Positions 17,007-59,640 of a stretch of 64,000 nucleotides of DNA are shown piece after piece. Source of the DNA: Mobula hypostoma (taxonomy: Eukaryota); contig NC_086099.1 of the NCBI RefSeq assembly GCF_963921235.1, positions 26,350,001 through 26,414,000 on the forward strand. Reading direction: 5' to 3'. How positions within the stretch are numbered: the first letter of the stretch is position 1; each line of letters begins with the position of its first letter. The notes beneath the pieces are model-generated. The model was not told where the DNA came from. It did no database searches and was given only the letters and a program-made list of their open reading frames with translations. The translations under genes and the position numbers were made by a program.

Positions 17007-17010
17007 CTTA

Positions 17011-23177: not shown

Positions 23178-23300
23178 GAGTCCTGCCAAATGGTTTCAGC
23201 CTGAAACGTCGACTGTACTTTTTTCCACAGATACTGCCTGGCCTACAGAGTTCCTCCAGCATTTGCTCAGATTTCCACATCCGCAGATTTTCTGTTGTTT
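23178..23300 (+). mobile_element. Penelope terminal-repeat insert with mutated hammerhead core
   Basis: AGTC-CTGCCAA-...-GAAAC-GTC-GACT; TSD CC(C/A)CTTAAACT (23167-23177 and 23301-23311). Confidence 0.75.
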
Positions 23301-24256
23301 CCACTTAAACTTTTCACCTTTCACCATAAACGCATAACCTCTGGCTGTAGTCCCACCCAACATCAGTGGAAAGCGCCTGCTTTCAGATACCCTATCTATA
23401 CCCCTCATAATTTTGTATAACTATCAAATCTCCTCTCAGTCTTCTACGTCCTAAGGAATAAAGTCCTAACTGATTCAATCTTTCCTTATAACTCAGGTCC
23501 TCCAGATCCAGCAACATGCCTGTAATTTTCTCTGTACTCTTTCAACCTTATTTACATCCTTCCTGTAGGTACTTGAACAAAACTGCACACAATACTCCAA
23601 ATTAGGCCTTACCAATATCTTGTACAACTTCAACATAACTTCATCCCATCTTCTGTTCTCAATACTATGAAGATATGAAGATCAATGTGCCAAAAACTTT
23701 CTTCATAATCCTACCTACCAATGATGCCACTTTCAATGAATTACGGACCTGTATTTCCAGATCCCTTGTTTAATAACACTCCTCAGTGCCCTACGGTTGA
23801 CTTTGTAAGACCCACCCTGGTTGGTCCTATTGAAGTGTAACACCTCACATTTGTCTGCATTAAATTCCATCTGCCACTTTTTCAGTCCATTTTCCCAGCT
23901 GATCCAGATTCCTCTGCAAGCTATAATAGCCTTCCTCACCGTCCACTACATCCCCAATCTTTGTGTCATCTGTAAACGTGCTGATCTAGTTAACCACATT
24001 ATCATTCACATTGTTGATATAGATGGCAAACAGCAATGGACCCAGCACCGATCCCTGCAGCACTCCACGACTCACAGGCCTCCAGTCAGTGAGGCAACCA
24101 TCTACTACCACTCTCTAGCTTCTCTCTCAAAGCCAAAGTCTAATCCAGTTTACTATCTTATCTTGAATGCTGAGCGACTGGATCTTCTTGACCAACCTCC
24201 CATGCAGGACCCTATCAAATGCCTTGCTGAAGTCTGTGCAGACAACATTCACTTCA

Positions 24257-24458
24257 CACATCAAAGGTGCTGGTGAACGCAGTAGGCCAGGCAGCATCTC
24301 TAGGAAGAGGTAGTCGACATTTCAGGCCGAGACCTTTCGTCAGGACGAAGGGTCTCGGCCTGAAACGTCGACTGTAACGCATGCCTGGCCTGCTGCGTTC
24401 ACCAGCAACTTTGATATGTGTTGCTTGAATTTCCAGCATCTGTAGAATTCCTCGTGTT
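24257..24458. mobile_element. Fold-back (inverted-dimer) Penelope terminal-repeat insert with hammerhead motifs
   Basis: Arms 24257-~24345 and ~24345-24420 are reverse complements; 13-bp TSD AACATTCACTTCA (24244-24256 and 24459-24471). Confidence 0.85.
24312..24346 (-). ncRNA. Hammerhead motif, near intact
   Basis: GUC-CUGACGA-AAGGUCUCGGCCU-GAAAU-GUC^GACU; one change in stem III (C to U). Confidence 0.55.
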
Positions 24459-25665
24459 AACATTCACTTCATCTTTTTTCCTGGTAACTTACTCAAAAAA
24501 AAAACTCTGAGATCAGTTAGACATGACCTACCATGCACGAAGCCATGCTGACTATCCTTAATCAGTCCATGAATATCCAAATACTTACATATCCGATCCC
24601 TTAACTTTCCCACTACTGATGTCAGACTCTACAGGCCTATAATTTCCTGGTTTATGTTTACAGCCTTTCTTAATCAGTGGAATAACATTATCCATCCTCC
24701 AATCTTCTGGTACTTCTCCCATTGCTAAGAAAGATTAATTATCTCTGCTAAGGACTCCGCCTACGGTCAGGTCCGAGGGACCACCTTGTCAGCCTCTGGA
24801 GATTTAGCCACCCTGATTTGCCTCAGGACTGCAAACACCTCCTCCTCTGTAATCTGTAAGGGGTCTATGAAGTTGATGCTGCCTTGCCACACTTCTATAA
24901 ACTTTGTGAGTAAATAAAGATGCAAAAAAAAATTAAAAGACCTCCCCCATCTGTTTTGGCTCTACACATGGATGCCAATTTTGATCTTCCAGAGCACCAA
25001 TATTGTCCCTTACAATCCTTTTGCTCTTAACATATCTGTAGAATCCCTTAGGATTCTCTTTCACCTTGTCTGCAGGGGCAACTTCATGCCTTCTTTGAGC
25101 TCTTCTGATTTCTTTTTTAAGTGTTCTCTTGCACTTCCTGTACTCCATAAGCATCTCATTTGTTCCTATCTGCCTATGGCACTTTTTTTTTCTTAGCCAG
25201 GGTCTTAATCTCCCTTGAAAACCAAGGTTCCCTACACTTATTATTGTTACTTTTTAATCTGACTGGCTTTGTACTCTCAAAATTTCACTTTTGAAGGCCT
25301 TCCACTTACCAAGTACACCTTTGCCAGAAAACAGCCCCACCTAATCCAGATCATGTCTGACACCATCAAAATTGGCCTATCTCCAATTTAGAATCTCAAC
25401 CCGCAGTCTAGACCTGTTTTTTTTTGCATATTTTGAAACTAATGGCATTATGATCATTGTGATCAAAGTGTTCCCCTACACAAAATTCTTTCATCTGCCC
25501 TGTCTCAGTCCCAAATAGCAAATCAAGTATTGCAAACTCTCTCGTTGGGACTTCTACGTACTGATTAAGGCAACTTTTCTGAACACGTTTGATAAACTCT
25601 ATCCCATTTAGTCCTTTCACAGTGTGGGAGTCCCAGTCAATGTAAGTTAAAATCACCTACTATAA

Positions 25666-25786
25666 GGGTCTCGGCCTGAAACGTCGACTGCGCCTCTTCC
25701 TATAGATGCTGCTTGGCCTGCTGCGTTCACCAGCAACTTTGATGTATGTTGCTTGAATTTCCAGCATCTGCAGAATTCCTGTTGTT
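25666..25786 (+). mobile_element. Penelope terminal-repeat insert, 5'-truncated inside the hammerhead
   Basis: GGGTCTCGGCCTGAAACGTCGACTG...CCAGCATCTGCAGAATTCCTGTTGTT; TSD TACTATAA (25658-25665 and 25787-25794). Confidence 0.8.
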
Positions 25787-26640: not shown

Positions 26641-28001
26641 TGAGACGCTAGAAAAAAGTTACCGATATCAAGAGATGAAAGCTGTCCGAACTTCCCCCCT
26701 CAATCTACGAGGTATCATTTTTCTGTTCCCAAACGGTAGATTATCTAATCATCTTTCAATACGGCTGCACTGAGTGAATGAGCTTGATTTCTCTCAAATA
26801 TTAAATTAACCACCAGTCAAAATAACCGGGTTGTTCAGTTGGACAGAGGCTGAAATCTGCAGGAAGTGCCGGACGAACTCAGTGGGTCATGTAGTCCTAA
26901 TGAAGGGTCTCGACCCGAAACGTCCACTCTCCTTCTCGGCCCCACCCCCCACTGAATTCGTCCAGCGCTTTGATTTTCTTCAATTACAGTAACGTCGATG
27001 TCTTAAGGCAGCATCTGTATAATCAAAATCAGCTTTAATATCATTGTCTTATACGGCACGCTGTCTTGCAGCAGTAGTACAGTGCAAGGACATAAATTCA
27101 TTATGAATTACAAACTAAATAGCGCAGAAGGGAAAAGAACAACGATGCAGTGCTCAGGGACCTTTCAGAAATCTGAAGACAGAAGCGGGAAAAGAAGCTG
27201 TTCCTGAAATCGTTGAGTGTGAATCTTCAGGCTCTTGTACCCTTCCTGTTATCTGAGCCGATGAGTACATCCGGCACTTCGTTATTTTATTCGGAGTTTT
27301 AGGGCCGGAGAATTAAGAATTTTGAGTTGAGAGTTGTAAAAGAAACGTGAGAAAGCAAACAAATCATTTATATCGCGTGCAAGTGAGCAGGCGGACATCC
27401 AGATACTGTTTAAACTCAACGACTACAATCAAGGCCTCCTAACTATCTGTTAGAATGCTTCAGTTGTCGTTTCTTAAATTAACATTATAGAAGGTATCAT
27501 GTATCCTACAGCTCCGAGGGCTCCGCTGTGTCTCCCTCCTAACCAAATGGTACCGCCGTAAATTATCTTCACTTCAAAAGTTGATGGGCTAAATTGCTTG
27601 GAGACACAAGACTATAGGTGCAAGTGTCTGGAGTACAGTACTGATTTGCTGGGTCAGCTCAATAAGTCAAGCAGCATCTGTGCGAAGAACGAAATTTACG
27701 TTTCGGGTCGGAACTATTTAGGGATCAGAGCTGAAACTGCTCCCCACCCTCGGGCCAATGTTGGTCGCCCCACTGAGCTCCTACAGCAGATTATTTGTTT
27801 AATAAATTGTTGTTTTTAGCATTGATAAGATCAATTTAAGGCGAAGTAATTTTAAATTTTATGGTGACAGGATAAATCCACACTTCCCCATATCTGTTCT
27901 GCAATTTTATTGTATCATCACTGCTTAGCCTCTAATTTAAGCTTTACCTGCCTGCCTTAGTTTCATACCCATTAATAACCTCACCAAATCGTCAGCTATG
28001 T

Positions 28002-31800: not shown

Positions 31801-34069
31801 ACCAAAGCAAATTTATTAGTTGGTTACAATAACACAAAAAAAATAAAAACAACTGGCTATGCTTAACTAGCTTTTAAAGGTGCTTCTAGATTCATTCTAA
31901 TATGTTGAATCTACACCAGCAAAAAAGAGGACTTTGTCTCAAAATACATTCACATTCCAAATCTTGACAGGAGCTCACTTAAAATATAGTTAGCTTTAAT
32001 TTTCATAGATATATTGTACTGCAAGAAAGTGTTTTTCTTAAAAGAGTACAGTGCATTTTGTATATGTTGGTGGTCTCTTTTAATGAATAAAAAAACATGC
32101 AAAACAAAAAGGAAATGTAAAATGTAGTATTTATTCAGTGAGAAGGACGTCCCCTGCAAGACACACTCCCTTTATTTAAAAAAAAGCATGAAGTAAAGGA
32201 CACATTTGGGAAATCTGATTCTTCATTATGCTTTTCTCAGTGAATCCTTTCAAATACAACCAATGGTTGTGTAGTAAATCAAACAGATCTATAATCATGG
32301 AGGCAATCTTTAAAAAGGATTTTATTCCAAGATTTTAAATCTAGTTGTTCAAAAAAAAAAAGGCTTTCCAACTCCCCAATCTCCTCAAATCAAGTCAAAA
32401 ACCAAGTCAAATTTATGGTAGTTGTATGAAGTTCATAACTAATCCTTAAAAACTGCGAAACAATGGGCAGCTCCACAGGATGGTTTTTCAACTTTATGCA
32501 AGGAATACATGTGACATGGCACATCTAACGTTGCTTTAAGTTGCACTATTGGACCACCAGAGATGAAAATATGATCATTCCAGATTTTCCACAGGTCAAG
32601 TGTAAAAATAATTACTATTGTTCTTGATAGTACTAATAGATATCCTCCATTGAAGATAAATTAACAGATGTAAATCCTCTACACAAGGAGCAATATTTCC
32701 ACCCTTTTACTGCTGGCAGAAAAGAATTCACAAAGTAAATTAGAAGTAAATTTTAAAATCAAATGAAATACAATCATTAGCACCATGACCAAAGCTGGAC
32801 CTTTCCTGTAAATGAAAATCCAAACTGCAGATGCTGGAAATTTCAAATTCAAAGAAAATGCTGGAAATACCCAACATGAAGCTGTGGAAGGAGACTTAGT
32901 TTCAGGTCAGAGGCTCTTTGTAGGAACTGTCATGATGAAGGCTCTGATTTGAAATGTTCCACATATTCTTTCTCGTTTTTCGTTCCACATATAATTTTTG
33001 ATTTGCTGATTACTTCCAGCATTTTCTGTTTTTATTTAATGTTCACATGATTTTTACGTTCTTTTTTTAAACCAGCATTCAGTGAGAAATACAATTCTTC
33101 CTCTCTGATGCAAACATAGCTAAGCAAGTGGCTGGGCTGTCTAGAACCAGTAGCAGCAGCAAACGCAGGGATGATGTGCTTAAGAGCCCCATTCTCATGA
33201 CATTTGCTGACCAAAATGGTCAGTTGACTTGAACCAGCAATTCAGCCAGAAACATCAACCAGTGCAGCAGCCTTCCTTGAGACTTGAGGAGATGATAGAG
33301 GTAGTTACCCAGTGAACATTAGATTACTAATCTGGGATGTCACTGGCTGCCAATAGAAAGTGAATAAGAAAAATGCCCATTTGCACAATTCCCAAAATTC
33401 AAAAAAAAGTCTTCCAAGTTGCCTGCAGTCAAATTACACTTGACTTTTAGTAATTATATATTCAAAGAGATTCTCATTATACATTACATCACACCACTTT
33501 GATGTACAAATGCATCAAAAATTGGACTTTCAGGATTAGGAATAATGATGAACACAATGAAGTTGTACAAGGTCCATTTGTTATAAGCACACCAATTTTA
33601 ACTAATTAGGCTGCATTACCAGTCTGGTCATACCTGATTCAAAAATTGGATTCACAGAAGTAAGAAGGTGGTCTTCAACCAACAGGTTCAGATCAAAGCA
33701 ATATCACACTAAAACATGGTAATTTGAAGAGGTACAATAATCATGTTCAAAATCCTGATTTCTCAATTTACCTTCCAAGATGATTCCAATAGATTTAATC
33801 AATGATTAATGTTTAAATTGGTTGTGCCCAACAAGAAAGATTACGCAAAAACTCAAATGTGAAGTTCTGTTTTTGTTTTTTTCAACAGTACTTGAAGTGA
33901 TAATCTTCAGTAAAGGAAAAAGTTGGTATTTTCAAAACTTGCATTATACAAATATAAAGTTTTCAGGACTGTTGGCATGGATACAACTTTCAACTCCATT
34001 AAGTAATGTAAACTGACATCAAACAGACACTTGTAATATTTAAAATTGCAAATAAGTCTTCACTGAGCT
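28814..34069 (-). other. SIGMAR1: Putative long (~5.2 kb) SIGMAR1 3' UTR with several AATAAA signals (e.g. 33031-33036, 28894-28899, 28814-28819)
   Basis: AT-rich and almost free of repeats, unlike all flanking intronic and intergenic DNA. It ends at clustered minus-strand AATAAA just before repeats resume. Confidence 0.5.
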
Positions 34070-34299
34070 TCAAAAGAAGCCAGCTCCAGTGAGGTACGTA
34101 TTGGCTTCCAGAATGAGTGCTTTTACGTAGACTGATAATGTATAATAGAGAGTAACAAAATCCAGTGTGCTGAAGATTGTATCTGATAGTGCAAACCCTA
34201 ACATAGATGGAATAAAGCCTCGGCCATATTCTACCATCCAAGTCCCCGAACTCCAGCGGACAGCCGTGGCTTCGCCAACAGAATGGACTATCGTGTCAC
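34070..34299 (-). CDS. SIGMAR1: SIGMAR1 exon 4 coding part; full CDS 663 nt = 220 aa
   Basis: cccacag|GT GAC ACG ATA encodes [75 protein letters not shown]. The ligand-binding Glu in WMVEYGRG is retained. Confidence 0.96.
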
Positions 34300-35742
34300 C
34301 TGTGGGAACAGATTATACTTCATGAGTTCTTTTTTTAAAAAAAAACCTAAACTAGTCTTAAAACCAAGCACTCAAAACAATTGGAATTCAGATGATCCTC
34401 CATTCGAAATAAAGAATTAGTAAACCTTTACAACAGTTAGTTGCTGCTGAGACTCCAGATTATCCATAACACATGAACAAATAAAAGGTATACATTGACT
34501 TCTGGCTTTGACAACTTAGATTTTCTGCCTTCTCCAATTGTCCTGAGAAGGTGGCACTGGCTACTTTTTTGTATGTACAGGATGGCATCTGCACAAGCAG
34601 GTGAACAACTGGAATCACATGCAAGCCAAGTTCATTGTGTAAAGAGGACAGGTCTTTTAATAACAACAGCTTCTAGGTTGTTCATTTCAAATAGAGTTTT
34701 ATAATTAGAATAAAAGTTTTCATGCTGAAATCTAACCTCATCCACTTGATTATTAGTGCCTGGTATAAATAGGTTGTCCTGTCTGGAATTAATTGTTTCA
34801 GCTTTTTGCTATAAATGAGTTATAATTTAATAGATGGACACTGAAATCTTGGAAGTGGCCAAGCAGTGAATAACTCGCATCAAACTTAAAACAGATAGCT
34901 CTACCTTGGCTGGCAGTACATAATGAGGATGATAAATGGCTTACTTATCCTGTAGAAGTCTGCGGGATCTTATCAACAATCCTGCAGACTTCAAGAAAAA
35001 TCTTATCATTTCATTCTAATTCAGTTAAAACATTAGTTTCTTGTGAATTACTCCACCAGCATATTGACATATAGTCTCATGAACTCAGTCATAGGGTATG
35101 AGGTATCAATATATCAGCTCTGCTTTGAGGAGACAGCTTGTTGGTAAGTGATTACCTCTGTTGTACAGTGCTGAGTGAAAAAAAGTTTGTGAAAAACTTC
35201 AGATTTACTTAATGAATACAAAATTATATTTGCTATTACCAGCATATGTTGTGAAGTTTGTTAACTTAGCAGCAGTACAATGCAATAAGTAAATTACAGT
35301 AAGCATATCTATATTGAATAAACTAAAAATAGTGCAAAAACAGAAATAATAAAAAAGTGAGAGTGTTCATGGGTTCAATGTCCATTTCGAAATCATTTGG
35401 AGAGAAGAAGCTATTCCTGAACTTCTGAGTGTGTGCCTTCAGGTTTCTGTACCTCCTTCCCAACGGTAAAAATGAGAAGAGGGCATGTCCTGGGTGATGG
35501 GGGGGGTGGCTTTAATAATGACAATGGACATTGCCTTTTTGAGGCACTGCTCCTTGAAAATGTCTTGGATACTACAAAGGATAGTACCCACTATGGAGCT
35601 GACAAATTTTACAACTTTCTGTAGCTTCTTTCAGTCCTGTGTACTATCATCACCACCTCCCCCCCGGCAACCCCATACCACATGGTGATACAGCTTGTCA
35701 GTGTTCTCCACGGTACATCTGTAGAAGTTTGAGTGTTTTAGG

Positions 35743-36352
35743 CAGACATCCCACCCTGCAAAAACTCATTTCAGGGAGGCAGCACCATCAATTTGCGGGA
35801 GACTTCCGGGAGAGGTGGGATGTCTGCAATAGAGTAGCTCCTTAGCAGCCAGCCAGCTAGCTTAAATAACATTAGCTATGCTAATGAACGAATGACACCT
35901 GTTAAACTCACCTCAACATGTCTTTTATAGTCTTAACCCACCATGGGCAATAGAAAAGTCACCGTTGCAAACAATGCAGCGAGCAACACTGTCATTATTT
36001 TTGACTCCTATTAGGCAGGGGTACACTTTAGTGTAGTCTGGGGTGACGTACTGTACGTTTCATATTTTCTTTTTTTTTTGGAACACTCTGCCATGGGACG
36101 CTCTTGCTCTCTCTCGTGGTCGCTCACCTGCTCTCGCTTGCTTTCTCTCTCGCCTGCCCCCCCCCGTGCTTTCACCTGCCCTCTCCCCCTCTCGCGCTTT
36201 CGCCTGCTCTCTCCCCCTCTCGCGCTCTCACTTGCTCTCTCTCGCTCTCAAAAAATTGATTTCCATGATATTGTATATAATTTGCAGGCATCAGGGAGCC
36301 ACTATTAATATGCGGGAGACTCCAGGATCTTCCGGGAGAGGTGGGATGTCTG
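35743..36352. mobile_element. Non-autonomous hAT-like element with 13-bp TIRs
   Basis: CAGACATCCCACC ... GGTGGGATGTCTG; TTTAGG on both flanks; internal CT-rich microsatellite. Confidence 0.7.
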
Positions 36353-36699: not shown

Positions 36700-37513
36700 G
36701 TCTGGACCAATACTGGATTTGGGTAGAAAGAGAATGCTATGAGCCAAGTGCTAGAAGATGGGAAGATGAGATTAACATGTACTGGGGGGGTGGGGTGGGA
36801 GGAGGAACCAACCATTTGATGGAAGAACTTAAGCAACACCTGTGGGAGGAAAGGAATTCTTGACCACCTGGGTTGAAATCTACATCAGGACTGAGAGTGG
36901 AGAGGCATGATGGTCAGTATGGGAGAAAAGGAGTGGTAAGAAAGGACTCCAAGGTGGATGATGGAAATGAGGAGGGGTGCAAGATGGCAGGCAGGTAGCA
37001 CCATGTAAGTAGGTGAGTAGGAGTTGTGTTTGACTACTAACTGGGCAGCTTTTTGCAATGTGCAGAACCATACACAAAATGACCCACTTCTGTAACATAC
37101 AATTCTCGATCAATTAAAATGAATACGACACTGATCAGTAGGCTTTTAAAATCACAATATCAGATCTTCTGATTAGCACTCCCATTCCTTGAACACCCAC
37201 CCTCCTCCTCATCAGTCCCTGGAGACCAGTCACCCCTATAGTTTTCTGTTTTAATTTATCACAATCGAAAATAATTACAGAATAGCAACGCTTAAATGAT
37301 AGTCTACAATTCTGTCTGTCTTGACCTGAACTCAACTACATTAAGTTGAGGTTCAGCTGTTATCTCAGCAGGGAGCCAACAATGGTGATAGAGCACAGGT
37401 AGAAACCTGTAGGAATATGTTCAGGCTAGTAAATAAAACAATGCACATACAGAGACTAAAAAGGTGGGATTCTGCATTTATCAATATCTACAAAAACAAA
37501 GTATAGAAACTAA

Positions 37514-38186
37514 AGCAACATACATCAAAGTTGCTGGTGAACGCAGCAGGTCAAGCAGCATCTGTAGGAAGAGGTGCAGTCGACGTTTCAGGCCGAGACC
37601 CTTCGTCAGGACTAACTGAAGGAAGAGTGAGTAAGGGATTTGAAAGTTGGAGGGGGAGGGGGAGATCCAAAATGATAGGAGAAGACAGGAGGGGGAGGGA
37701 TAGAGCCAAGAGCTGGACAGGTGATAGGCAAAAGGGGATACGAGAGGATCATGGGACAGGAGGTCCGGGAAGAAAGACAAGGGGTGGGGGTGACCCAGAG
37801 GATGGGCAAGAGGTATATTCAGAGGGACAGAGGGAGAAAAAGGAGAGTGAGAGAAAGAATGTGTGCATAAAAATGAGTAACAGATGGGGTACGAGGGGGA
37901 GGTGGGGCCTTAGCGGAAGTTAGAGAAGTCGATGTTCATGCCATCAGGTTGGAGGCTACCCAGACGGAATGTTGTTCCTCCAACCTGAGTGTGGCTTCAT
38001 CTTTACTGTAGAGGAGGCCGTGGATAGACATGTCAGAATGGGAATGGGATGTGGAATTAAAATGTGTGGCCACTGGGAGATCCTGCTTTCTCTGGCGGAC
38101 AGAGCGTAGGTGTTCAGCAAAGCGGTCTCCCAGTCTGCGTCGGGTCTCGCCAATATATGAAAGGCCACATCAGGAGCACCGGACGC
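37514..38186 (-). mobile_element. 5'-truncated Penelope-like element (GIY-YIG endonuclease C-terminal part + terminal repeat)
   Basis: Minus strand reads YCVRCS*CGLSYIGETRRRLGDRFAEHLRSV...PVATHFNSTSHSHSDMSIHGLL (PLE GIY-YIG). Flanked by the 14-bp direct repeat AGTATAGAAACTAA (37500-37513 and 38187-38200). Confidence 0.88.
37577..37614 (-). ncRNA. Minimal type I hammerhead ribozyme motif (intact core, loop-less palindromic stem III)
   Basis: UAGUC-CUGACGA-AGGGU CUCG GCCU-GAAAC-GUC^GACUG: stem I UAGUC/GACUG, conserved CUGANGA and GAAA boxes, stem II hairpin, GUC cleavage triplet. Located in the PLE terminal repeat. Confidence 0.75.
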
Positions 38187-38201
38187 AGTATAGAAACTAA
38201 C

Positions 38202-46744: not shown

Positions 46745-47148
46745 TGGGTTCCATCACCTCCAACTGGACCACACCACCAAACACATCTCGCCCCACACTT
46801 TCTGCTTTCCAAGGGATCTCTCCCTACGCGACTCTCTTGTGCATGTGTCCTTCCCCACTGATCTCTCTCCTGGCACTTATCCTTGTAAGCAGAACAAGTG
46901 CTACACCTCCTCCCTCACTACCATTCAGGGCCCCAGACAGTCCTTCCAGGTGAGGCGACACTTCACCTGAGAGTCTGCTGGGGTCATTTACTGTGGTCAG
47001 TGCTCCTGGTGTGGTCTCGTGTATCAGTGAGACCTGACGTAGATTTGGAGACCGCTTTGCCGAGCATCTGGCAGATGGAGTGTAGAATAAGCTGGATCTC
47101 CCAGTGGCCACGTATTTTAATTACTCTTCCCATTGCAATATGTCCCCA
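46745..47148 (+). mobile_element. Penelope-like element GIY-YIG region fragment running into the assembly gap
   Basis: LRDSLVH...PGTYPCKQNKCYT...TIQGPRQSFQVRRHFT*ESAGVIYC. Confidence 0.75.
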
Positions 47149-47358
47149 NNNNNNNNNNNNNNNNNNNNNNNNNNNNNNNNNNNNNNNNNNNNNNNNNNNN
47201 NNNNNNNNNNNNNNNNNNNNNNNNNNNNNNNNNNNNNNNNNNNNNNNNNNNNNNNNNNNNNNNNNNNNNNNNNNNNNNNNNNNNNNNNNNNNNNNNNNNN
47301 NNNNNNNNNNNNNNNNNNNNNNNNNNNNNNNNNNNNNNNNNNNNNNNNNNNNNNNNNN
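47149..47358. other. Assembly gap (210 N)
   Basis: Run of N in SIGMAR1 intron 1. Confidence 1.
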
Positions 47359-48284: not shown

Positions 48285-50370
48285 CATTAGGACATTCAGC
48301 CATCTAGTATGCTCCACCATTCCATCATGGCTGATCCATTATCAATCCTAACTCCATTTTCTTGCCTCTCCTTTTAATTTTTCACACCCTTACTAATCAT
48401 GAACTTATCAATTTCCACTTTAAATATACCTAAAGACTTGGATGTCTGTGGCAGTGAATGCCACTGATACATCACCTCTGGCTAAAGAAATTCCTCCTCA
48501 CCTCTGCTCTAAAGGGATTTCTAGACTCCTCCACAATCGGGAGACCACTCCATCCAGACCTTTCAACATTAAATATAGGTGTCCATGATAACCCCCTCAT
48601 TCTTCTAAACTCCAGTAAGAGGCAAAGGCGGGTTACTGGCGCCTTAAAACCAGTCGCTTTGGGCAGATGGTGCTTGTCAGCTGTGGCTGCTGCTCATCTA
48701 GGGGAAAGAAAACTCTGATCTCAAAGCCCCGCTGCCCTGCGGTTATACCACTCACGGGGAAGACTCTGGAGCTGGAGTCCCTAACGCAGTCCTACATCGA
48801 GTCCAATGTTGACTGGCAGCTGCTGCGATATTCCTGGAACCAAACTCTATCAGTCTCTGCTGTTCCTTTAGATTCGTCAGATACGTGGAGAGGGGGAAGC
48901 TTGCCACACTGGTGACTGCTTGCTCTCCATATCGTACTGCCCAGCCTTGTGTAACCAGACAGCTCAGACGCAACATCCATGTTCAACGCTGACTGACGGA
49001 GGCCCCCACTCGCAGTTCCAGAACCATCAAATGCTCCTCAAATGTCAACTCTTTCATTCCGGAATTATTCTCGCAAACCTCCTCTGGACCCTCTCCAATG
49101 AAGACACATCATTTCTTAGAAAACAGACCCACAACTGCTTACAATACTCCTAGTACAGCCTGACCAATGCCTCATTAAACCTCAGTATGACATCTCTGGT
49201 TTTATATTCTAGCCCTCTTGAAATTAATGCTAAAATTGCTTCCTTACCAACACTACCTGAAAATTAGCCTTCAAGGAATCCTTCATGAGGAGTTTAAAGT
49301 ACCCTTGCACCTTTGATTTCTGAATTTTCTCTGCTTAGAAAATCTTCTAAGCCTTTATTCCTCCTACCAAAGTACGTGAACATACACTTACCGACACTAT
49401 ATTTCATCTGCCACTTCTTTGCCCATTCTCTCTATCTGTCCAAGTCCTTCCACAGACTCCCTGCTTCAACACTACCTGTTTCTCCAGGTTTCTTATTACT
49501 CTCCGCAAACCTAGCCACAAAGCCATCAATACCGTCATCCAAATCATTGACATATAATGTGAAAAGAAGCAGTCCCAACACCGACCCCTGCAGGCCACCA
49601 CTAGTCACCAGCAGCCAACCAGAAAAGGCTCCCTGTATTTTCACTCCTACATCTTCTGATCCTATGTCATCTCTAACAAATTCATTTCATTTTATTTCAC
49701 CAGAGTCATCCTAACTCCTCTGCCTATCTGTCTGTATTTTTGAATCCCACTACAACCTTCTTTCAGCCATGACTGAATGATGCCTCCAGCTCAATTCCTG
49801 CCAATCTCTAACTGCACTACAAGATCATCTACCTTATTTTGCATACAAATATTCACCTTCTGTCCTCTATTTATCCTTTTTGATTTTGCCCCTATGTAAC
49901 ACTTCAAACTCATCCCACTGACTGCAATTTCACCCTATCATCTGTCTGTCCTTCCTCAGTCTCACTACACACTGCACCTAGTTGTACACCAACTGCCCCA
50001 TCCTCAGCCCTACCACTCCAGTTTGCATCCCCCTGCAAAGTTAGTTTAAAGCCTCCCCAACAGCTCCAGCAAACCTGCTGCAAGGACATCGGTCTCCCTT
50101 GAGTTTAGGTGTAACTTGTCCTTTCTGTACAGGTCATACCTTCCCCAAAGAGATCCCAACAATCCAGAAAACTTAAACCCTGCCCCCTGAACCAACTCCT
50201 TAGCCAGACTTTCATCTGCCAATCTTCCCCCCGCTGGCACGGTGGCACAGGCAGCAGTTCTGAAATTACTACCTTCTTCAGCTTTCCACTTAACTCCCTA
50301 TATTCTCTCTCCAGGCTCCATCCCTTTTCCTACCTATATCATTGGTACTAAGTACCACAACTTCCAGCTG
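48285..50370 (-). mobile_element. Decayed, internally deleted CR1 LINE with an RTE-related insert at ~48615-49005
   Basis: SGGLQGSVLGLLLFTLYVNDLDDG...FA; WGRYDLYRKDKLHLN (ORF1 esterase C-terminus). Confidence 0.75.
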
Positions 50371-53004: not shown

Positions 53005-54486
53005 GTAATTTACACAAAGATTTACTAATTTTGCTAGAAATGGTGAAGTTGGTCTAATTAATACTGAAACATCACTGCCTGATCTATTCATTTAGTGGCT
53101 GCTTGTCTTGTGTTAGATGCCGTTTAATCTAATTCTATTCTGGCGGAAGTATGTTTCTGTTTATCGGATCATAATCTTCCTTTGCCCACTGTGTGTGCTA
53201 TCCTTCAAAATCCCAATGTATACGTTTTGCTGGGCACGTTACTAAACGTACACATTGAATTTTGAAGTGAGGGAAAACTTGGGGTCGAAAGAGGGTTTGT
53301 TTTAACATAATGAAACGGGGTAAGGATTGGGACAGAAGTCCAAAGTTAAACAGGTGAAATTCGTGCTAAATAAGAAGACTGAATCAAAGTTGAAAAAATA
53401 TCTATGGTTAATAAAATTTAAAGTGACAGGGCTTTACGTTTGAACGTTAAAGCGCACTTATCTCCCATTTACTGTACAGCTTAGACGGTTGGAATACTTT
53501 AACTGTATGATTTGACAATTCAAATCAACCAAGAAACTTGCGGTTTATGAATGCATTTTAATGGCGAGGCAGATACAGCAAATACATTCTGTGAACATCA
53601 GAGAATGATCTTGAGGTTTCTCTTTTGTGCATCTATGCTTTGTTCATTATTGGTTAGTATTCTTGTTATCATTGGTTAACTCGGAATTAGATAAACTTAG
53701 GACTTTGGTTGGTTGCTGTCTGAAAAAGTTCTAATTTTCTTACCACACAACTTTTACTGGTTCAGTTTTTATTTAAAAAGAAAAACTAATTAAATACTAA
53801 ATCACAGATAAGAATAAGAAGACCCCCTCCCTCCCCCACGAGCAAAAAAGCATCTTCCCCACCAGCAAAAATGATTCCTCCTTCTCCATTCATTTACCTT
53901 ATCCACCCATTTGGCTTCACTTATCACCTTCTAGCTAGCCTCCTTCCTCTCCCTCTACCTTTTTATTCTGGCATCTTCCCCCTTCCATTTTACTCGCGAA
54001 GAAGTGTCTTGGCCTGAGACGTTGACTATTTATTCCTCTCAATTTATGCTTCTTCACCTGCTGAGTTCCTCTATCATTTTGTGTGTGTTGCCTTGGATTT
54101 CCGGCATCTGCAGAATTTCTCATGTTTGTGATTCACTTTCCCTGCCTAAAGATTGCCTTGTTGCTTGTGTTTAGTTTCTATTCTCTTTTGTTTTGTGGTC
54201 CCTAATGCCTTGTTATTTTGCGGTCTATTATTAAAGTTATTGCTTACTGCTGCATCATCTCCTCTGCTGTTGGGCCAAGCTTCTGCTACAAAGTTCTAGT
54301 GATATCATTGGAGTATTCAGTTATTAGAACTTTCAGTTCTTTTCAGCAGTTAACTGTTGTAGATAACTATGTTTAGGACTTGAATGGGAAGCTGGAATGA
54401 AAATCTGCAGACTGTGGATAAGCAAGAACAGAATTGGGGATTATTGGACCATGAAAATAAGAATGTGGTTTTAAAATAGACGTACA

Positions 54487-54707
54487 TTCAAGAGAATCTG
54501 CAGATGCTGGAAATTGTCAGGAACGCACACAAAATGCTGGAGGAACTGAGCAAGTCAGGCAGCATCTGTGGAAGGGAATAAACAACTGCCATTTTGGGCA
54601 GAAACAGTCCGGATGAAGGGTCTTGGCCCAATATGTCCACTACTGATTCTTTTCCATAGATGCTGCCTGAATTGCTGAGTTCCTCCAGCATTGTGAGTGT
54701 GTTGCTT
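54487..54707. mobile_element. Fold-back Penelope terminal-repeat insert with degenerate hammerhead
   Basis: AAAATGCTGGAGGAACT...AGTTCCTCCAGCATT inverted arms; central CAGTC-CGGATGA-AGGGTCTTGGCCC-AATAT-GTC; flanking AAAATAGAC repeats. Confidence 0.7.
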
Positions 54708-55049
54708 CAAAATAGACAAATTTTAGGTGTAATATGTCTGGCACCAGAGTGACAGTGTGGGTATTTGTACATGCAGAAGTCTTCTGAACCTATATGTATG
54801 CTCTTTTCCACACTGTTTTTCAGTCTTGTATCATTTTCTCCAGGCATCCTTTCCCCTCTATCTTCTCCCCTAAATGCCCTCCTCCTTTTTGTATTTTCAA
54901 TTCTACCCTGGCCTTGTTCTAGCCATTGGCCTCTTCGTTCTCTCCTGGGTGAGACTGCCTCACTTGCACAGTCCTCTTTACTCAGTGGCAAGGGACTGCC
55001 CATGGATGATGTTATGCCAAGACTGTTCTCTAACTTTATCACATCAAAC

Positions 55050-55965
55050 TTAGCGCTCACTTCCGCTCATTCCCATTCCGACATGTCGGTCCATGGCCTC
55101 CTCTACTGCCATGATGAGGCCATTCTTGGGTTGGAGGAGCAACACTTTCTATTCTGTCAAATAGTCTCCCCTCGTACAGTTAATTCTATAAAACACAATG
55201 CAATGGGAAAGAAGCAAGTCTGAAAAGAACACTGATATACAGAGGGGCCAGTACCTCATTTTCCATCTGGATTCCCACCAACCTGATGGCACGAACATTG
55301 ATTTTTAAAACAACACACACAAAATGCTGGAGAAACTCAGCAGGCCAAGCACCATCTAAGGAAAAAGGTATAGTCGATGTTTTGGGCCGAGAATAGAGTA
55401 TAGTCGATGTTTCTGTAAATGGTGCCTCGTCTGCTGAGTTCCTCCAGCAATTTATGTGTATTGATTGGATTTCCAGCATCTGCAGATCTTTTCTTGTTTA
55501 TGATTGATTTTTTAAAAAAATTTCTTTAATTTCCGCTCCCTCCCCTTTCACTCTTTTTCAATTTCCCTTCTAGCTCCTTTTCAACCCTTCCCTTCTCCTC
55601 ACCAGCCAATCACCTCCTTCTGGTGCCCACTTCCTTCCCTTTCTCCCATGGTCTACTCTCCTCTCCTATCAGATTCATCCTTCTACTGCTTGTCACCTCC
55701 CAGCTTCTCACTTCATTACCCCTCCCACCCCACCTATCCATCTTCCCCATTACCTGGCTTCACTTGTCACACGCTACCTTGTACTCATTCCCCTCTCCCC
55801 CCACACATTCTGGCTTCTTGCCGCTTCCTTTCCAGCCCTGAGGATGGGCCTCAGCCCGAAGCATTGACTGTTTCTTCCTGTGTTTAGGTGCTGCCCAACC
55901 TGCCGAGTTCCTCCAGCATTTGGTGTTTGTTTTTCTGGACTTCCAGCGTCTGCAGATTCTCTTGT
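55050..55965 (+). mobile_element. Composite decayed Penelope-like fragments
   Basis: HSHSDMSVHGLLYCHDEAILGLEEQH; a fold-back insert at ~55310-55500; pyrimidine-rich spacer and terminal repeat with CAGCC-CTGAGGA-TGGGCCTCAGCCC-GAAG. Confidence 0.65.
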
Positions 55966-57030
55966 GATTATGGTCTCACTGCTACTGCTGGGACAGAAAG
56001 AGATATTACATCCAGTAACTCAGAGACTTCCTTTGTCCAAAGCCTAAAGGTCCCAACATGCTTTCAGTTGGCCTGGCAGTTTAATTACCGAAGTTTATTA
56101 TCAAAGTATATATAAATAAACAACCTTGAGATTTGTCTGTTTATAGGCAGTCACAAAACAAGAAACCCGAAAGAACCCGTTTTAAAAAGAGACTATAACT
56201 ACCACTCAATGAGCAGACGGAGAAAAATGCAAATCAGGCGAACGCTAAAAAGCAAGCAATAGCATTCGGAACAGATGTAAGTCCGTAGACATGAAGCCCA
56301 GAGCAGCTGGATCAGGCCCACAGCGTTCGGCCTCGGTTATTCACAAAGCGGGGCAAGTTGCCGCGAAGCTTGCAAACACAAGCTCGGAGCAGCTGGGGCA
56401 GGCCATGGCCTAAGTCTCGGTGTTGTGGAGAGCGGAGATCGAAGCTAACAATCCAGACGTATAAAATTCAAATCCAGCTGCAGCAGTTGTGGAATTTGAA
56501 AATCAGTGTTTCACCTGGAATTTGTTAAAAAATAGAGCTACTATGTTATATAAAAAAAAATGCATCTGGTTCACCAACGACCTTCAGAGAAGGAAATCCG
56601 CCATCTTTATCTGGTACAGGACTTCAGCCTCACCAATGAGATGAAGTCAGGAAAGGCCTAGTGAGCCACTTACTTCAAGGACATTTAAGGGTGGACAATA
56701 AATGCTGGCAATACTGGGTTCCATTTTTATTTTAAACAGAACTGTCAATAAGCAGCTTCACTGCTTTTGGGAGAATCGGGCCTCTCCCAGAAACTCCCAA
56801 CCCTGTGTTTCATTTGACACCTGCGCTCTCCTGGAGCAAGGTGAGCTCCCCTCTGTCATTGCTTTTCCTTCCACCTCTCACTGATCTCAGCAGCCATTTC
56901 ACGGGAGACCTCTGGCCTCCTTAGGACCGCTCCTACCCTGAACGCTTCCCCAGCGAGTAACTTTGCAGGAGGTCTGCTTGCCTGGCGTCACATTTATTAT
57001 TGTCACATGTACTCAGGTACAGTGAAAAAC

Positions 57031-57126
57031 AAGCAACACACGCAAAATGCTGGTGGAATGCCGCAGGCCAGGCAGCATCCACAGGAAGAAGCACGGGTGA
57101 CGTTTCAGGCTGAGACCCTTCGTCAG
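57031..57126 (-). mobile_element. Penelope terminal-repeat insert; hammerhead core intact (57099-57126) but stem I lost by truncation
   Basis: CTGACGA AGGGTCTCAGCCT GAAAC GTC on the minus strand; direct repeat CAGTGAAAAAC (57020-57030 and 57124-57134). Confidence 0.78.
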
Positions 57127-58107
57127 TGAAAAACTTTGTTTTGCATGCCGTCAATACAGATCAGCTCCTCGCATCAGTACATCAAGCTAGTACAAGGGAT
57201 AAAAAACAACTGAACACAGAACACAGTTACAGGGAATGGGTGTGCTGCAGACAATAATTTGCAAGGCCATAACGAAGTAGATTGTGAGGTCAGAAGTCCA
57301 CCTTATTGTACAAGAGGTCCTTTCAATTGTCTTATACTGGTGGGGTAGAAGTTGTGCTTAAGCCTGATGATGTAAGTTTTGCAGGCTTTTCTATCTTCTA
57401 CCGGGCCGGGGGGGGGGGGAGTTATAATAGAGAATATCCGGAGTGGGAGGAGTCTTTGTTTATGTTGGCTGCTTAACCAAGGCAGTGTGACGTGTAGCAG
57501 AATCCATCGAGGGGAGGCTGGTGTCCTGTGTCCTCGTCTCTCTGCAGTTTCTTGTGGTCCCATGCAGAGTAGCTGTCATATCAAGCCATGATGCATCTGG
57601 TCTGGATAAGATGCTTTCCATGGTAGGTCACTTGGCCATCATTTAAGAACAGCTGCTTCACAATATGTCACCTCCAGCAGTCTCTATTTGTGTTTCATCA
57701 GTCCTTGCCAATCCACTTCTTATACATTTCTTATAGAAAAACATGAGGTGGCGGGATGGAGGTATACCTCTACCAAAGGAGGTGTGAGGTGCTCCTTCCC
57801 TCCACTAGCCTGCAGGTCACCTTTGGCGGAAGTGAAGAACCTGTTTAGTGCCCCCCCCCCCCCCAATCAGGGTCACTTGTCGGATGGTTGTATGAGTAGC
57901 TGGTGTATATCACAAGTCCTGGTTATGTAACCACTGACGCCAGGCAGACAATCTCTGGCCAGATTTCCCCCGGGATCAATAAAGTATGACTATGACTATA
58001 GAAGAAAGCAATGGCAAACCACTTCTGTGAAAATTTGCCAAGAACAATCATGGTGATGGGACCGTGATTGCCTATGTCATATGACATGGCACATACCGAA
58101 TGAAGAT

Positions 58108-58487
58108 GATGAAATGTATAAAATTCTAAAGGGATTGGACAGGCTAGATGCAGGAAGATTGTTCCTGATGTTGGGGAAGTCCAGAACGAGGGGCCACAGT
58201 TTGAGGATAAAGGGGAAGCCTTTTAGGACCAAGATGAGGAAAAACTTCTTCACACAGGGAGTGGTCTATCTGTGGAATTCTCTGCCACAGGAAACAGTTG
58301 AGGCCAGTTCATTGGTTATATTTAAGAGGGAGTTAGATATGGCCCTTGTGGCTAAAGGGATCAGGGGGTATGAAGGGAAGGCTGGTGCAGGGTTCTGAGT
58401 TGGATGATCAGCCATGATCATACTGAATGGCGGTGCAGGCTCGAAGGGCCGAATGGCCTACTCCTGCACCTATTTTCTATGTTTCTA
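58108..58487 (+). mobile_element. CR1 LINE 3' end, well conserved
   Basis: YKILKGLDRLDAGRLF...SRTRGHSLRIKG...RKNFFTQ; TTCTATGTTTCTAT tail. Related tails occur at 41560-41722 (+) and 41984-42072 (-). Confidence 0.85.
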
Positions 58488-59440
58488 TCAAAAGCCAACA
58501 TGAATGGGATTGTAAGATTCAATTTTACTGCTTGTTTCCAGCAGGTATTTTTCTTTCTGTTACAGACCATTGGCTTTACTGCACTTCTGGTATTTTGCAG
58601 TTTTAAAGTTCAAAGTTTGACGTACTGAACATTTATTATCAAAGTTAGTATGCAGTATACAACCCTGAAATTTGTCTTGCCCATAGCGACGAAACAAAGA
58701 GAAACCATAGAACCAACCCACCCAGGGAAAAACATCAGACATCAAACTCCCCTCCCAAGGCAAAATATATCGTCAAATGGCTCCAAGAAAACCGAGGAAA
58801 TACAGCATATAAACACACGCTATCAATAAGCATATTTCAGTAGAGTACTGTCTCTATGGTAATACTAGAAATATAACTGCCAATTTATATCTAAATGGCA
58901 TTAGGAAAATAACCAGATAATAGTGTTTAAAAGTCAAGATTGAGAGATCACAAGTATTGGCCAAGGCTTCTGTGGATAATGTCTTTGGATTTTCTCCAAA
59001 TGATACCAGCAGAGTTTTATGACCACCTGAGTAAACTGTAGGAGCTTGGATTTTTTTTAATATTCAAGTTCCTAGTGAGCTCATAAGCTCTGGCCTGGAT
59101 GACCGCACCAGCTGATTCCTATTGCTGGTTTTCCTATGTGAATTGGTTCTTCTCCGAAATGCATCACTTTTTTTGCTTAATTATGTAAATTTTGGCCAGA
59201 ATTTGCATACAGCTGAAGTGCAACTGTAGGGGAGAATGGAATTTTTGATGTTTCGGGTTGAATCCTGCACCCAGCATCTGCAGTTTCTTGCGTCTCCTTT
59301 AAATCGCATAGACTTCAGAGTAATGGATAGTTCTCATGAGATGAGAATTGGTTAACAGTAGAATGAGTGAGAAGAAGTGAGTCTTTCTCAGATTGCCAGG
59401 CAGTGGTTGGTAGGGTACCACCAGGATCAAGGGTTGGGAT

Positions 59441-59640
59441 AGCACACAAAATGCTGGAGGAACTCAGCAGGCCAGGCAGCATGTATGGAAAAGAGGACAG
59501 TCAAAGTTTCAGGCCGAAACCCTTCAGCAGGACTGACCTGAAATGTCGACTGTACTCTTTACCAGAGATGTTGCCTAGTCTGCTGAGTTCCTCCAACATT
59601 TTGTGTGTGTTGCTGGGAAATCTGCAGATTTTCTCGTTTG
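59441..59640. mobile_element. Fold-back Penelope terminal-repeat insert in a CR1 fragment
   Basis: Inverted arms; minus strand CAGTC-CTGCTGA-AGGGTTTCGGCCT-GAAAC-TTT-GACTG; imperfect TSD TCAA(G/A)GGTTGGG. Confidence 0.72.

What the first reader, a model, noticed from the sequence alone, without database searches (positions are those of the whole stretch)
23178..59640. Dispersed family of minimal, probably dimer-dependent hammerhead ribozymes carried by Penelope-derived mini-elements
Seen: about 12 inserts (~4390, 23178, 24257, 25666, 26890, 32900, 37514, 53990, 54487, 55310/55835, 57031, 59441) share the consensus CAGTC-CTGACGA-AGGGT CTCG GCC(C/T)-GAAAC-GTC-GACTG. This maps onto a type I hammerhead: stem I CAGUC/GACUG, CUGANGA and GAAA boxes with one extra A, a stem II hairpin, and a GUC cleavage site. 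Stem III has no loop (GAAAC-GUC), so a monomer cannot close it, but the ACGU palindrome lets two copies form a shared 4-bp stem III. Established: Penelope-like elements carry minimal hammerheads with short stem III that can cleave as dimers; the GIY-YIG remnant at 37990-38186 ties this repeat to PLEs. Inference: at roughly 1 copy per 5 kb, this genome may hold a very large reservoir of intronic self-cleaving RNA motifs that standard repeat annotation would label only as SINE or LINE.
Basis: partly seen in the sequence, partly recalled or inferred. Interest (0 to 1): 0.8.

Follow-up and report, generated by a model that had tools for sequence, protein, structure and literature searches.

The report
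Decayed Penelope retrotransposon tails with hammerhead motif
The repeats are short, mostly broken end-pieces of a Penelope-like jumping gene that carry that element's already described minimal hammerhead ribozyme motif, so this is an ordinary new family of a known kind and not a new class of ribozyme.

Summary
The window has at least 14 insertion events (about 20 repeat arms, roughly 1 per 4.6 kb) of a 100-130 nt unit. The unit begins with AGTC-CTGACGA-A-GGGT-CTCG-GCCY-GAAA-CG-TC|GACT.

The motif fits the minimal hammerhead ("min-HHR") that Cervera and de la Pena (2014) described in Penelope-like elements (PLEs). It has no helix III loop, a palindromic ACGU, an extra base after A9, G10.1-C/U11.1 and a 4-5 bp helix I.

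The PLE link is confirmed:
- Two long copies run endonuclease remnant, then a ~270-300 nt spacer, then the hammerhead, then the tail.
- The endonuclease remnant matches the C-termini of RT+GIY-YIG proteins.
- A full-length relative from another source carries a differently spelled min-HHR in both terminal repeats, with every pairing kept.
- Fold-back pairs sharing one 12-14 bp target duplication, with a ~30 nt tail on one end only, are the usual PLE insertion signature.

The "reservoir of self-cleaving RNAs" is overstated. Only 1 arm of about 20 (37613-37578, minus strand) is intact. About half lack the CUGANGA box, and six events are fold-backs in which one or both arms lack that box or would be locked in a long hairpin. 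Cleavage was not tested.

The N gap touches no repeat arm. A third PLE fragment runs into it. Earlier notes of this scan record the same family elsewhere in this genome.

The parts
37578..37613 (-). The only intact minimal hammerhead in the window. Helix I AGUC/GACU, C3-A9 = CUGACGA, extra A, helix II GGGU/GCCU with loop CUCG, G12-A14, A15.1-C15.2-G16.2-U16.1 with no loop, C17. Predicted cut between 37582 and 37581.
   Evidence: strict descriptor: 1 hit in the window, 0 in 300 shuffles.
37502..38196 (-). Long 5'-truncated PLE copy. GIY-YIG endonuclease remnant 38196-37916 (one in-frame stop, one frameshift), CT-rich spacer 37915-37614, hammerhead, then a short-type tail ending near 37502. It lies in sense orientation in the last intron of a sigma-1-receptor-like gene.
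   Evidence: intron context.
55058..55966 (+). Older long PLE copy (endonuclease C-terminus remnant, spacer, decayed hammerhead at 55835-55871, long tail). It is interrupted by the later fold-back insertion at 55307-55497.
   Evidence: tblastn 55059-55311; collinear with the 37502-38196 copy once the nested pair is removed; score 161 against shuffle maximum 64.
23179..23298 (+). Single short copy starting at GAGTCC, with a long tail and a 13-bp target-site duplication (1 mismatch). Core mutated at A6>C and G8>A.
24257..24458 (.). Fold-back pair. The minus arm has a short tail, an intact core and a weakened helix I. The plus arm has a long tail and has lost C3 and U4. A perfect 13-bp duplication (AACATTCACTTCA) flanks the whole pair.
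   Evidence: (hairpin -127 kcal/mol, z = -14).
25664..25786 (+). Single short copy truncated inside the hammerhead, lacking the CUGANGA box. Long tail, 8-bp target-site duplication.
26843..26988 (.). Fold-back pair. The plus arm starts at AGTCC and carries G5>A. The minus arm is truncated to the tail only.
27647..27718 (-). Old single arm, truncated inside the hammerhead, about 33% diverged from the consensus.
32800..33030 (.). Very decayed inverted pair (approximate limits), seen by eye only.
   Evidence: no profile hit.
4369..4439 (.). Weak, short inverted pair lying outside the finding's span.
53998..54125 (+). Single arm with a long tail; core decayed.
54491..54710 (.). Fold-back pair. The plus arm has a short tail, starts at AGTCC and has 4 core changes. 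The minus arm has a long tail and is 5' truncated. Target-site duplication of about 12 bp.
55307..55497 (.). Fold-back pair nested in the older long copy. Both arms lack the CUGANGA box. Target-site duplication of about 14 bp.
57010..57127 (-). Single arm with an intact core but no helix I: the 3' strand is mutated and the 5' strand is absent.
59440..59639 (.). Fold-back pair. The minus arm has a short tail, starts at AGTCC and carries A6>C and G16.2>U. The plus arm has a long tail and is truncated at helix II. 12-bp target-site duplication with 1 mismatch.
46785..47133 (+). Third PLE ORF remnant (end of RT, linker, first half of the endonuclease). It runs into the assembly gap, so its 3' end, and any hammerhead there, cannot be seen.
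47149..47358 (.). Assembly gap (N). Not filled. No repeat arm touches it.

Best explanation
These are dead insertion products of a canonical, endonuclease-bearing Penelope-like retrotransposon (PLE).

Shown here:
- Each unit is the stretch of the element's terminal repeat from the first base of hammerhead helix I to one of two alternative 3' ends about 25-38 nt apart.
- Two copies continue upstream through a ~270-300 nt spacer into the GIY-YIG endonuclease coding region.
- Six of 14 events are head-to-head pairs. The four best-preserved pairs are each bounded by a single 12-14 bp target-site duplication and have the longer tail on one end only.
- The motif at the head of the unit meets every sequence criterion of the published PLE min-HHR.

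Inferred from published PLE work:
- In the parent element's RNA the motif cannot close helix III on its own.
- It is expected to cleave after GUC only when two copies pair through ACGU and swap their helix I strands, probably helped by the element's own protein.
- The short copies arise because PLE reverse transcription starts internally, about 70-100 nt downstream of the hammerhead, and usually aborts within or at the hammerhead.
- The pairs arise because both target strands are cut and extended.

After insertion the copies decay neutrally, with CpG sites going fastest. The hammerhead is conserved only in the source-element lineages.
For: Repeat and its significance.

Anatomy and ends. Target-site duplications were found around four of the pairs and two of the single copies. 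In 4 of 4 clear pairs, one arm has the short tail and the other the long tail.

PLE link:
- The endonuclease piece has 986 homologues.
- The long homologues have RVT_1 followed by a C-terminal GIY-YIG, located where the piece aligns.
- There are three separate PLE ORF remnants in the window.
- A second long copy is collinear with the first.

Independent relative (L001): a 924-aa PLE ORF lies between ~1.1-kb direct repeats, each holding the same min-HHR, GCAC-UUGAUAA-A-GGGU..ACCC-GAAA-AU-UU|GUGC. Compared with the window's motif:
- all four helix I pairs differ yet still pair;
- 15.2-16.2 is A-U instead of C-G, so the palindrome is kept;
- the core pair is U3-A8 instead of C3-G8, the covariation reported in PMC4209133;
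- the extra A and G10.1-C11.1 are retained.

Literature:
- PMC4209133 lists the same four unsought features and also mentions dual motifs on opposite strands.
- PMC8557442 describes heavy 5' truncation, an adjacent inverted 5'-truncated copy, and a 30-40 bp tail often at one end only.
- PMC11167929 shows two internal reverse-transcription start sites, cutting and extension of both strands, and a protein-assisted hammerhead.

Conservation and decay: non-CpG mismatches are 10.1% in the core against 19.4% in the tail (Fisher p = 0.0085). CpG positions show 27% mismatch.
Against: - No cleavage was measured. The nearest-neighbour model prefers an inactive monomer hairpin in which GACG of the core box pairs with CGUC at the cleavage site (-11.9 kcal/mol). 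It gives the domain-swapped double hammerhead only -12.9 against -23.8 for two monomers.
- Within the window there is no significant stem covariation: 201 of 500 shuffles reach the observed score.
- Rfam hammerhead models do not hit the motif, even at E up to 10 on a 91-nt slice. The control motif from the full-length PLE is missed as well, so this result is uninformative.
- Pfam does not call GIY-YIG on the 77-aa remnant itself.
- The sharp 5' limit of the short copies at helix I is not explained by simple random truncation, nor by hammerhead cleavage. Cleavage would give copies starting at GACTG, and none does.
Confidence: 0.88

Rival explanations
1. The 100-130 nt unit is a self-standing, non-autonomous mini-element: a ribozyme-headed, SINE-like or retrozyme-like parasite of the PLE machinery. 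On this view it has its own defined RNA, whose 5' end is the first base of helix I, and it amplifies as a unit. It would not be an aborted copy of full-length PLE RNA.
For: - The 5' terminus is discrete. Four arms start exactly at (G)AGTC and three more within 3 nt.
- No arm ends between 130 and 700 nt upstream; there are only two long copies.
- There are at least two subfamilies whose tails differ while the hammerhead is identical.
- Non-autonomous derivatives of PLE terminal repeats are known (bioRxiv 10.64898/2026.07.22.740005).
Against: - There are no head-to-tail arrays, which define retrozymes.
- No tRNA, 7SL or 5S-type promoter head is present.
- Fold-back junctions differ from pair to pair, at consensus positions 2, 13, 18, about 35 and 54. 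Each pair is therefore a separate event and not a copy of one master.
- Half of the arms are truncated further in.
- Heavy 5' truncation is normal for PLEs (PMC8557442).
Confidence: 0.08
2. The hammerhead likeness is incidental. On this view the conserved head of the unit is a protein-binding or reverse-transcription signal of the PLE, and no RNA cleavage occurs in vivo.
For: - Published min-HHRs cleave very weakly in vitro (PMC4209133).
- In the Anolis PLE, hammerhead mutants did not affect insertion in vitro, and no RNA-seq reads ended at the cut site (PMC11167929).
- The predicted monomer minimum-energy fold here is inactive.
Against: - The strict descriptor gives 0 hits in 300 shuffles.
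- A relative with a different sequence keeps every pairing and both core boxes, including the U3-A8 swap.
- C3G/G8C rescue experiments show true ribozyme chemistry in a PLE hammerhead (PMC11167929).
Confidence: 0.03
3. The fold-back units are DNA transposons of the MITE type, with terminal inverted repeats and target-site duplications.
For: The pairs are about 200-bp near-perfect inverted repeats flanked by 12-14 bp duplications.
Against: - Single arms also carry target-site duplications (23179-23298 and 25664-25786).
- The arms are unequal, and the junctions vary between pairs.
- The same sequence continues into an RT/GIY-YIG ORF in two copies.
- Duplication length varies from 8 to 14 bp.
Confidence: 0.01

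Closest known systems
min-HHR of metazoan Penelope-like elements (Cervera and de la Pena 2014, PMC4209133; Lunse, Weinberg and Breaker, RNA Biol 14:1499, cited through PMC6765202 and not readable here)
   Same: - Type I hammerhead with no helix III loop.
- Palindromic 15.2-16.2 positions.
- One unpaired base between A9 and 10.1.
- G10.1-C11.1 in the older copies.
- Helix I of 4-5 bp with no defined loop 1.
- Sits in the PLE terminal repeat and is mostly dispersed as single truncated motifs, sometimes as dual motifs on opposite strands.
   Different: - Helix II is only 4 bp with a tetraloop, against 7-8 bp in Schistosoma and 6 in D. virilis.
- The young subfamily has G10.1.U11.1.
- The host is a cartilaginous fish (a devil ray according to an earlier scan note). 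No paper in the searchable library links PLE hammerheads to elasmobranchs.
Poseidon PLE of Anolis carolinensis (PAc; Frangieh et al. 2024, PMC11167929)
   Same: - The hammerhead lies a short distance upstream of the point where genomic copies end.
- There are two alternative 3' ends a few tens of nt apart (the 'tail').
- Both target strands are used.
- Copies are 5' truncated.
   Different: - In PAc the ORF start overlaps helix II. Here no ORF start is evident in the unit.
- The distance from the cut site to the copy ends is about 60-100 nt here, against about 85-92 nt in PAc.
- Activity was not tested here.
Double hammerheads of newt satellite 2 and ASBVd (Forster et al. 1988, cited in PMC4209133 and PMC6765202)
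   Same: Helix III is too weak for a monomer; activity comes through an extended intermolecular helix III.
   Different: Those have a short helix III with a small loop and occur in tandem transcripts. Here there is no loop at all and no tandem arrangement.
Non-LTR retrozymes of animals (Cervera and de la Pena 2020, PMC7229834; bioRxiv 10.64898/2026.07.22.740005)
   Same: Type I hammerhead, derived from PLE terminal repeats, non-autonomous.
   Different: Retrozymes are head-to-tail tandem arrays that yield circular RNAs. The copies here are dispersed singles or inverted pairs, and no arrays were found.

Membership tests
PLE min-HHR (Cervera and de la Pena 2014) | Conserved core boxes CUGANGA and GAAA, with a UH cleavage site. 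| tested here: met
   Present in the family consensus and in arm 37578-37613. The core is also intact in 24312-24346(-) and 57093-57128(-). The other arms are mutated or truncated.
PLE min-HHR (Cervera and de la Pena 2014) | No helix III loop, and positions 15.2-16.2 palindromic, so that two copies can build helix III. | tested here: met
   GAAA-CG-UC. The ACGU stretch is self-complementary. The 29-32 and 30-31 pairs hold in 88% of cells.
PLE min-HHR (Cervera and de la Pena 2014) | One unpaired nucleotide between A9 and 10.1. | tested here: met
   An A in nearly all arms that cover this position (column 13 of A1, at least 90%).
PLE min-HHR (Cervera and de la Pena 2014) | G10.1-C11.1 base pair. 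| tested here: met
   In A1 the pair is G-C in 4 arms, G.U in 6 and A-U in 1. Across all arms, C11.1 occurs in 7 and U in 9. The C sits in a CpG, so U can arise by deamination. The young subfamily carries U.
PLE min-HHR (Cervera and de la Pena 2014) | Located in the terminal repeat (pLTR) of a PLE. | tested here: met
   It lies about 270-300 nt downstream of the endonuclease stop codon in two long copies. The full-length relative L001 has the motif in both pLTRs.
PLE min-HHR (Cervera and de la Pena 2014) | Families within a genome rich in compensatory changes. | tested here: inconclusive
   Within this window only one-sided, pair-preserving changes are seen, and there is no excess over shuffles. 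Between this family and L001, six pairs change on both sides and remain paired, but that compares only two lineages.
PLE min-HHR (Cervera and de la Pena 2014) | Self-cleavage after H17 as a dimer. | not testable with these tools
   Only energy models were available. They do not favour the active fold, which is normal for hammerhead cores.
Canonical EN+ Penelope-like element insertion | One ORF with RT followed by a C-terminal GIY-YIG endonuclease. | tested here: met
   Only remnants are present in the window. The endonuclease piece aligns to the C-terminal GIY-YIG of RVT_1+GIY-YIG proteins. The remnant at 46785-47133 also covers the RT end and linker. No intact ORF is present.
Canonical EN+ Penelope-like element insertion | Heavy 5' truncation, an adjacent inverted 5'-truncated copy, and a 30-40 bp tail often at one end only (PMC8557442). 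| tested here: met
   Six inverted pairs. In 4 of 4 clear pairs the extra ~25-38 nt tail is on one arm only. One target-site duplication flanks each of those four pairs.
Rfam hammerhead families (type I, type III, HH9, HH10, II) | Score at or above the family gathering threshold. | tested here: not met
   No hammerhead hit at gathering threshold or at E up to 10, even on a 91-nt slice. A bona fide pLTR min-HHR control is also missed. These models require a closed helix III.
Non-LTR retrozyme | Head-to-tail tandem repeats, each with a hammerhead. | tested here: not met
   Tandem Repeats Finder reports only two unrelated short arrays. All arms are dispersed or inverted.
Classical SINE | A tRNA-, 7SL- or 5S-derived head carrying a pol III promoter. 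| tested here: not met
   ARAGORN finds none, and there are no Rfam hits.

The most novel reading that the evidence does not exclude
The segment from hammerhead helix I to the reverse-transcription start may be a discrete mini-template, not a random abort product. It would be an RNA whose 5' end is fixed at the first base of helix I, perhaps by a start site or a splice-related event. A 3'-splice-site-like tract lies 2-4 nt upstream of helix I both here and in L001. The PLE enzyme would copy this RNA preferentially, which would make it a ribozyme-headed parasite of the PLE. A side possibility is that the one intact copy, which sits in sense in the last intron of the sigma-1-receptor-like gene, occasionally cuts that pre-mRNA.
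Probability: 0.1. Interest if true: 0.5.

Novelty: new member of a known kind. Interest (0 to 1): 0.2.

Why it matters
The main value is for annotation. Standard tools miss the motif: Rfam finds nothing, even for a control from a full-length element. Pfam also fails to call the remnant endonuclease. Such repeats will therefore be labelled as unknown or as SINE/LINE.

Recognising them as Penelope tails explains three things:
- the 200-bp fold-back hairpins;
- the odd asymmetric ends;
- probably at least one assembly gap.

It also gives a clean natural data set for studying how these elements start and stop reverse transcription, because the 5' limits, the two 3' ends and the target duplications are all visible. 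It does not change what is known about hammerhead ribozymes.

Tried and rejected
- Rfam at gathering threshold on the whole window, at E up to 10 on 23-60 kb, and on a 91-nt slice: no hammerhead hit. I rejected this as evidence against the motif, because the control min-HHR from a full-length PLE is also missed.
- My first pattern, with a fixed 15-nt spacer, was mis-specified and found only chance matches.
- Pfam on the 77-aa endonuclease remnant: no family. A library-wide phmmer search plus Pfam on the full-length hits replaced it.
- Fetching DNA for the closest protein relative (P0001, 69% identical) failed because the sample file is too large.
- The covariation test inside the window was not significant.
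- RNAcofold: the first structure string was pseudoknotted and invalid. After correction to the domain-swapped form it still does not favour the active dimer.
- The Lunse et al. paper could not be read.
- MITE, SINE and retrozyme readings were considered and rejected on anatomy.
- Hammerhead cleavage as the origin of the short copies' 5' ends was rejected, because no arm starts at the cut site.

Full report
**Gap first.** The window has one N run, 47149-47358. No arm of the repeat lies within 4 kb of it. The finding is a list of dispersed places, so nothing in it depends on continuity or reading frame across the gap. A Penelope ORF remnant at 46785-47133 (+) does run straight into the gap, and the sequence to the right of it is unrelated. 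The 3' end of that copy, and any hammerhead it may have, cannot be seen, and I did not try to infer it.

- A 16-nt core pattern gives 11 matches where 0.17 are expected by chance.
- A profile built from eight copies finds about 19 arms at E<1e-5, plus weaker ones.
The one near 32900 falls below the profile threshold, but by eye it is an old inverted pair.
- Counting each pair as one event gives at least 14 insertions in 64 kb.
- The consensus head is AGTC-CTGACGA-A-GGGT-CTCG-GCCY-GAAA-CG-TC|GACT.
- A strict descriptor required a 4-bp helix I, CUGANGA, 0-1 extra base, helix II of at least 3 bp, GAAA, a Watson-Crick 15.2-16.2 pair and UH. It hits the window once, at 37578-37613(-), and never in 300 dinucleotide shuffles.

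**What the unit is.** The repeat is 100-130 nt long and begins with the hammerhead.
- Copies end at one of two places. The short end is around ...GTGTG/GTTGCTT and the long end is 25-38 nt further on.
- Six events are head-to-head pairs whose arms meet in or near the hammerhead.
- Each of the four best-preserved pairs is bounded by a single 12-14 bp target-site duplication. Two single copies have duplications of 13 and 8 bp.
- In all four clear pairs, one arm has the short end and reaches the start of the hammerhead. The other arm has the long end and is further 5' truncated.
- The junction position differs from pair to pair, so each pair is its own insertion event.
- If transcribed, the pairs would fold into roughly 90-bp hairpins of -72 to -127 kcal/mol, with z between -7 and -17. 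That would lock the motif against its antisense copy.

**Link to Penelope-like elements.** Upstream of the best copy, the minus strand reads a broken endonuclease domain (a Cys motif, then ..YIGET.., then the ORF end) from about 38196 to 37916.
- Pfam does not call the 77-aa piece.
- phmmer finds 986 relatives. The long ones carry RVT_1 followed by a C-terminal GIY-YIG, exactly where the piece aligns. RT followed by a C-terminal GIY-YIG is the canonical PLE architecture (PMC8557442).
- tblastn with those proteins finds two more remnants: 46785-47133 (+), and 55059-55311 (+).
- The second of these belongs to an older long copy. Once the nested later pair is removed, it is collinear with the 37.5-38.2 kb copy: endonuclease end, about 270-300 nt of CT-rich spacer, hammerhead, tail.

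**An independent relative.** L001 is a 5.3-kb metagenome contig.
- It encodes a 924-aa RT+GIY-YIG protein that is 48% identical to the window's remnant over 63 aligned residues.
- Its ORF is flanked by direct repeats of about 1.1 kb, spaced about 3.95 kb apart.
- Each repeat contains the same loop-less hammerhead, 65 nt before the ORF start: GCAC-UUGAUAA-A-GGGU..ACCC-GAAA-AU-UU|GUGC.

Compared with the window's motif, all four helix I pairs differ and still pair. The 15.2-16.2 pair is A-U instead of C-G, so the palindrome is kept. The core pair is U3-A8 instead of C3-G8, which is the covariation Cervera and de la Pena reported. The extra A and G10.1-C11.1 are retained. This is the best comparative support I obtained for the fold, although it rests on only two lineages.

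**Comparison with what is known.** Cervera and de la Pena (PMC4209133) defined this 'min-HHR'. They listed four features that emerged without being searched for:
- covarying families;
- G10.1-C11.1;
- palindromic 15.2-16.2.

They also described a 4-5 bp helix I, location in the PLE terminal repeats, thousands of dispersed truncated copies in fish, coelacanth and frog, and dual motifs on opposite strands. They found weak cleavage only as dimers or trimers, or with an extended helix III.

Craig et al. (PMC8557442) describe heavy 5' truncation, an adjacent inverted 5'-truncated copy, and a 30-40 bp tail often at one end only. Frangieh et al. (PMC11167929) showed that a PLE enzyme cuts and extends both target strands and starts reverse transcription at two internal sites, which accounts for the tail. 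They also showed that its hammerhead cleaves only with the protein present.

Every structural feature seen here fits these descriptions. I found no paper linking PLE hammerheads to elasmobranchs. A 2026 preprint does report PLEs and retrozymes in one chondrichthyan.

**State of the copies**. Of about 20 arms:
- one is fully intact (37613-37578, minus strand);
- two have an intact core but a defective helix I (24346-24312 minus, and 57128-57093 minus);
- seven carry 1-4 substitutions at essential positions such as G5, A6, G8, G12, A14 and 15.1;
- about ten are truncated and lack the CUGANGA box.

CpG positions mismatch the consensus at 27%. Non-CpG mismatch is 10.1% in the core against 19.4% in the tail (p = 0.0085). 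This largely reflects subfamilies whose tails differ while the head is identical. In other words, conservation acts in the source elements, not at the inserted copies.

Within the window there is no significant stem covariation. Rfam does not detect the motif, but it also misses the control. Energy models favour an inactive hairpin in which GACG of the core box pairs with CGUC at the cut site. None of this tests catalysis.

**Mechanism, with shown and inferred steps kept apart.**
- Shown: the anatomy, the PLE origin, the target duplications, the two end classes and the decay.
- Inferred from the literature: cleavage is dimer- or protein-dependent in the parent RNA; internal initiation about 60-100 nt downstream of the cut site explains the 3' ends; extension of both strands explains the pairs.
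- Unexplained: the sharp 5' limit. Four arms start exactly at (G)AGTC and three more within 3 nt. None ends between 130 and 700 nt upstream. No arm starts at the hammerhead cut site, so cleaved RNA was not the template. A 3'-splice-site-like tract lies just upstream of helix I both here and in L001, and PMC4209133 notes that the D. virilis Penelope intron ends at helix I. I could not test this in one window.

**Verdict.** The 'reservoir of self-cleaving intronic RNAs' is overstated for this window. Only the intact copy is shown to be intronic: it lies in sense in the last intron of a sigma-1-receptor-like gene. Earlier notes of this scan record the same family many times elsewhere in this genome. 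My independent tests agree with them.

Noticed in passing
window 38200-38295 (-) and 34073-34312 (-): These are two exons of a sigma-1-receptor-like gene (Pfam ERG2_Sigma1R, E = 1.2e-5 and 6e-21). The 5'-truncated Penelope copy begins about 4 nt after the donor GT of the upstream exon (CAG|gttagt) and lies in sense orientation in the ~3.9 kb last intron.
   Followed up: partly
window 46785-47133 (+), next to the gap at 47149-47358: A Penelope ORF remnant (RT end, linker and first half of GIY-YIG; 73% identical to P0001) runs straight into the assembly gap, and the sequence after the gap is unrelated. PLE tandem and inverted structures are known to break assemblies (PMC8557442).
   Followed up: partly
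window 23799-24210 (-), 43650-44061 (+), 49351-49644 (-): Three reverse-transcriptase remnants, 33-43% identical to the RVT_1 part of P0003. Whether they are Penelope or LINE was not determined. The first lies just beside the fold-back pair at 24257-24458.
   Followed up: no
window 37614-37640 (-) and L001:1100-1119: A polypyrimidine tract ending in cag/tag, resembling a 3' splice site, sits 2-4 nt upstream of hammerhead helix I in both the ray copy and the unrelated full-length PLE. The D. virilis Penelope intron is reported to end at helix I (PMC4209133).
   Followed up: no
window 24257-24458, 54491-54710, 55307-55497, 59440-59639: The fold-back insertions would form ~90-bp near-perfect RNA hairpins on either strand (-72 to -127 kcal/mol, z from -7 to -17). 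Transcribed copies could feed dsRNA pathways. That is speculation and was not tested.
   Followed up: partly
window 14000-20000 and 48000-50000: These stretches have raised GC content (0.43-0.50) and a strongly negative GC skew (-0.21 to -0.34). A CT-rich 27-28 nt tandem repeat lies in or near them, at 16580-16635 and 36157-36249. I did not examine them.
   Followed up: no
P0060 (594 aa, from the protein library): A RecQ5/SRI-domain protein model carries a match to the PLE endonuclease piece at its C-terminus (residues 492-558). This is probably a gene model that reads into a Penelope insertion.
   Followed up: no
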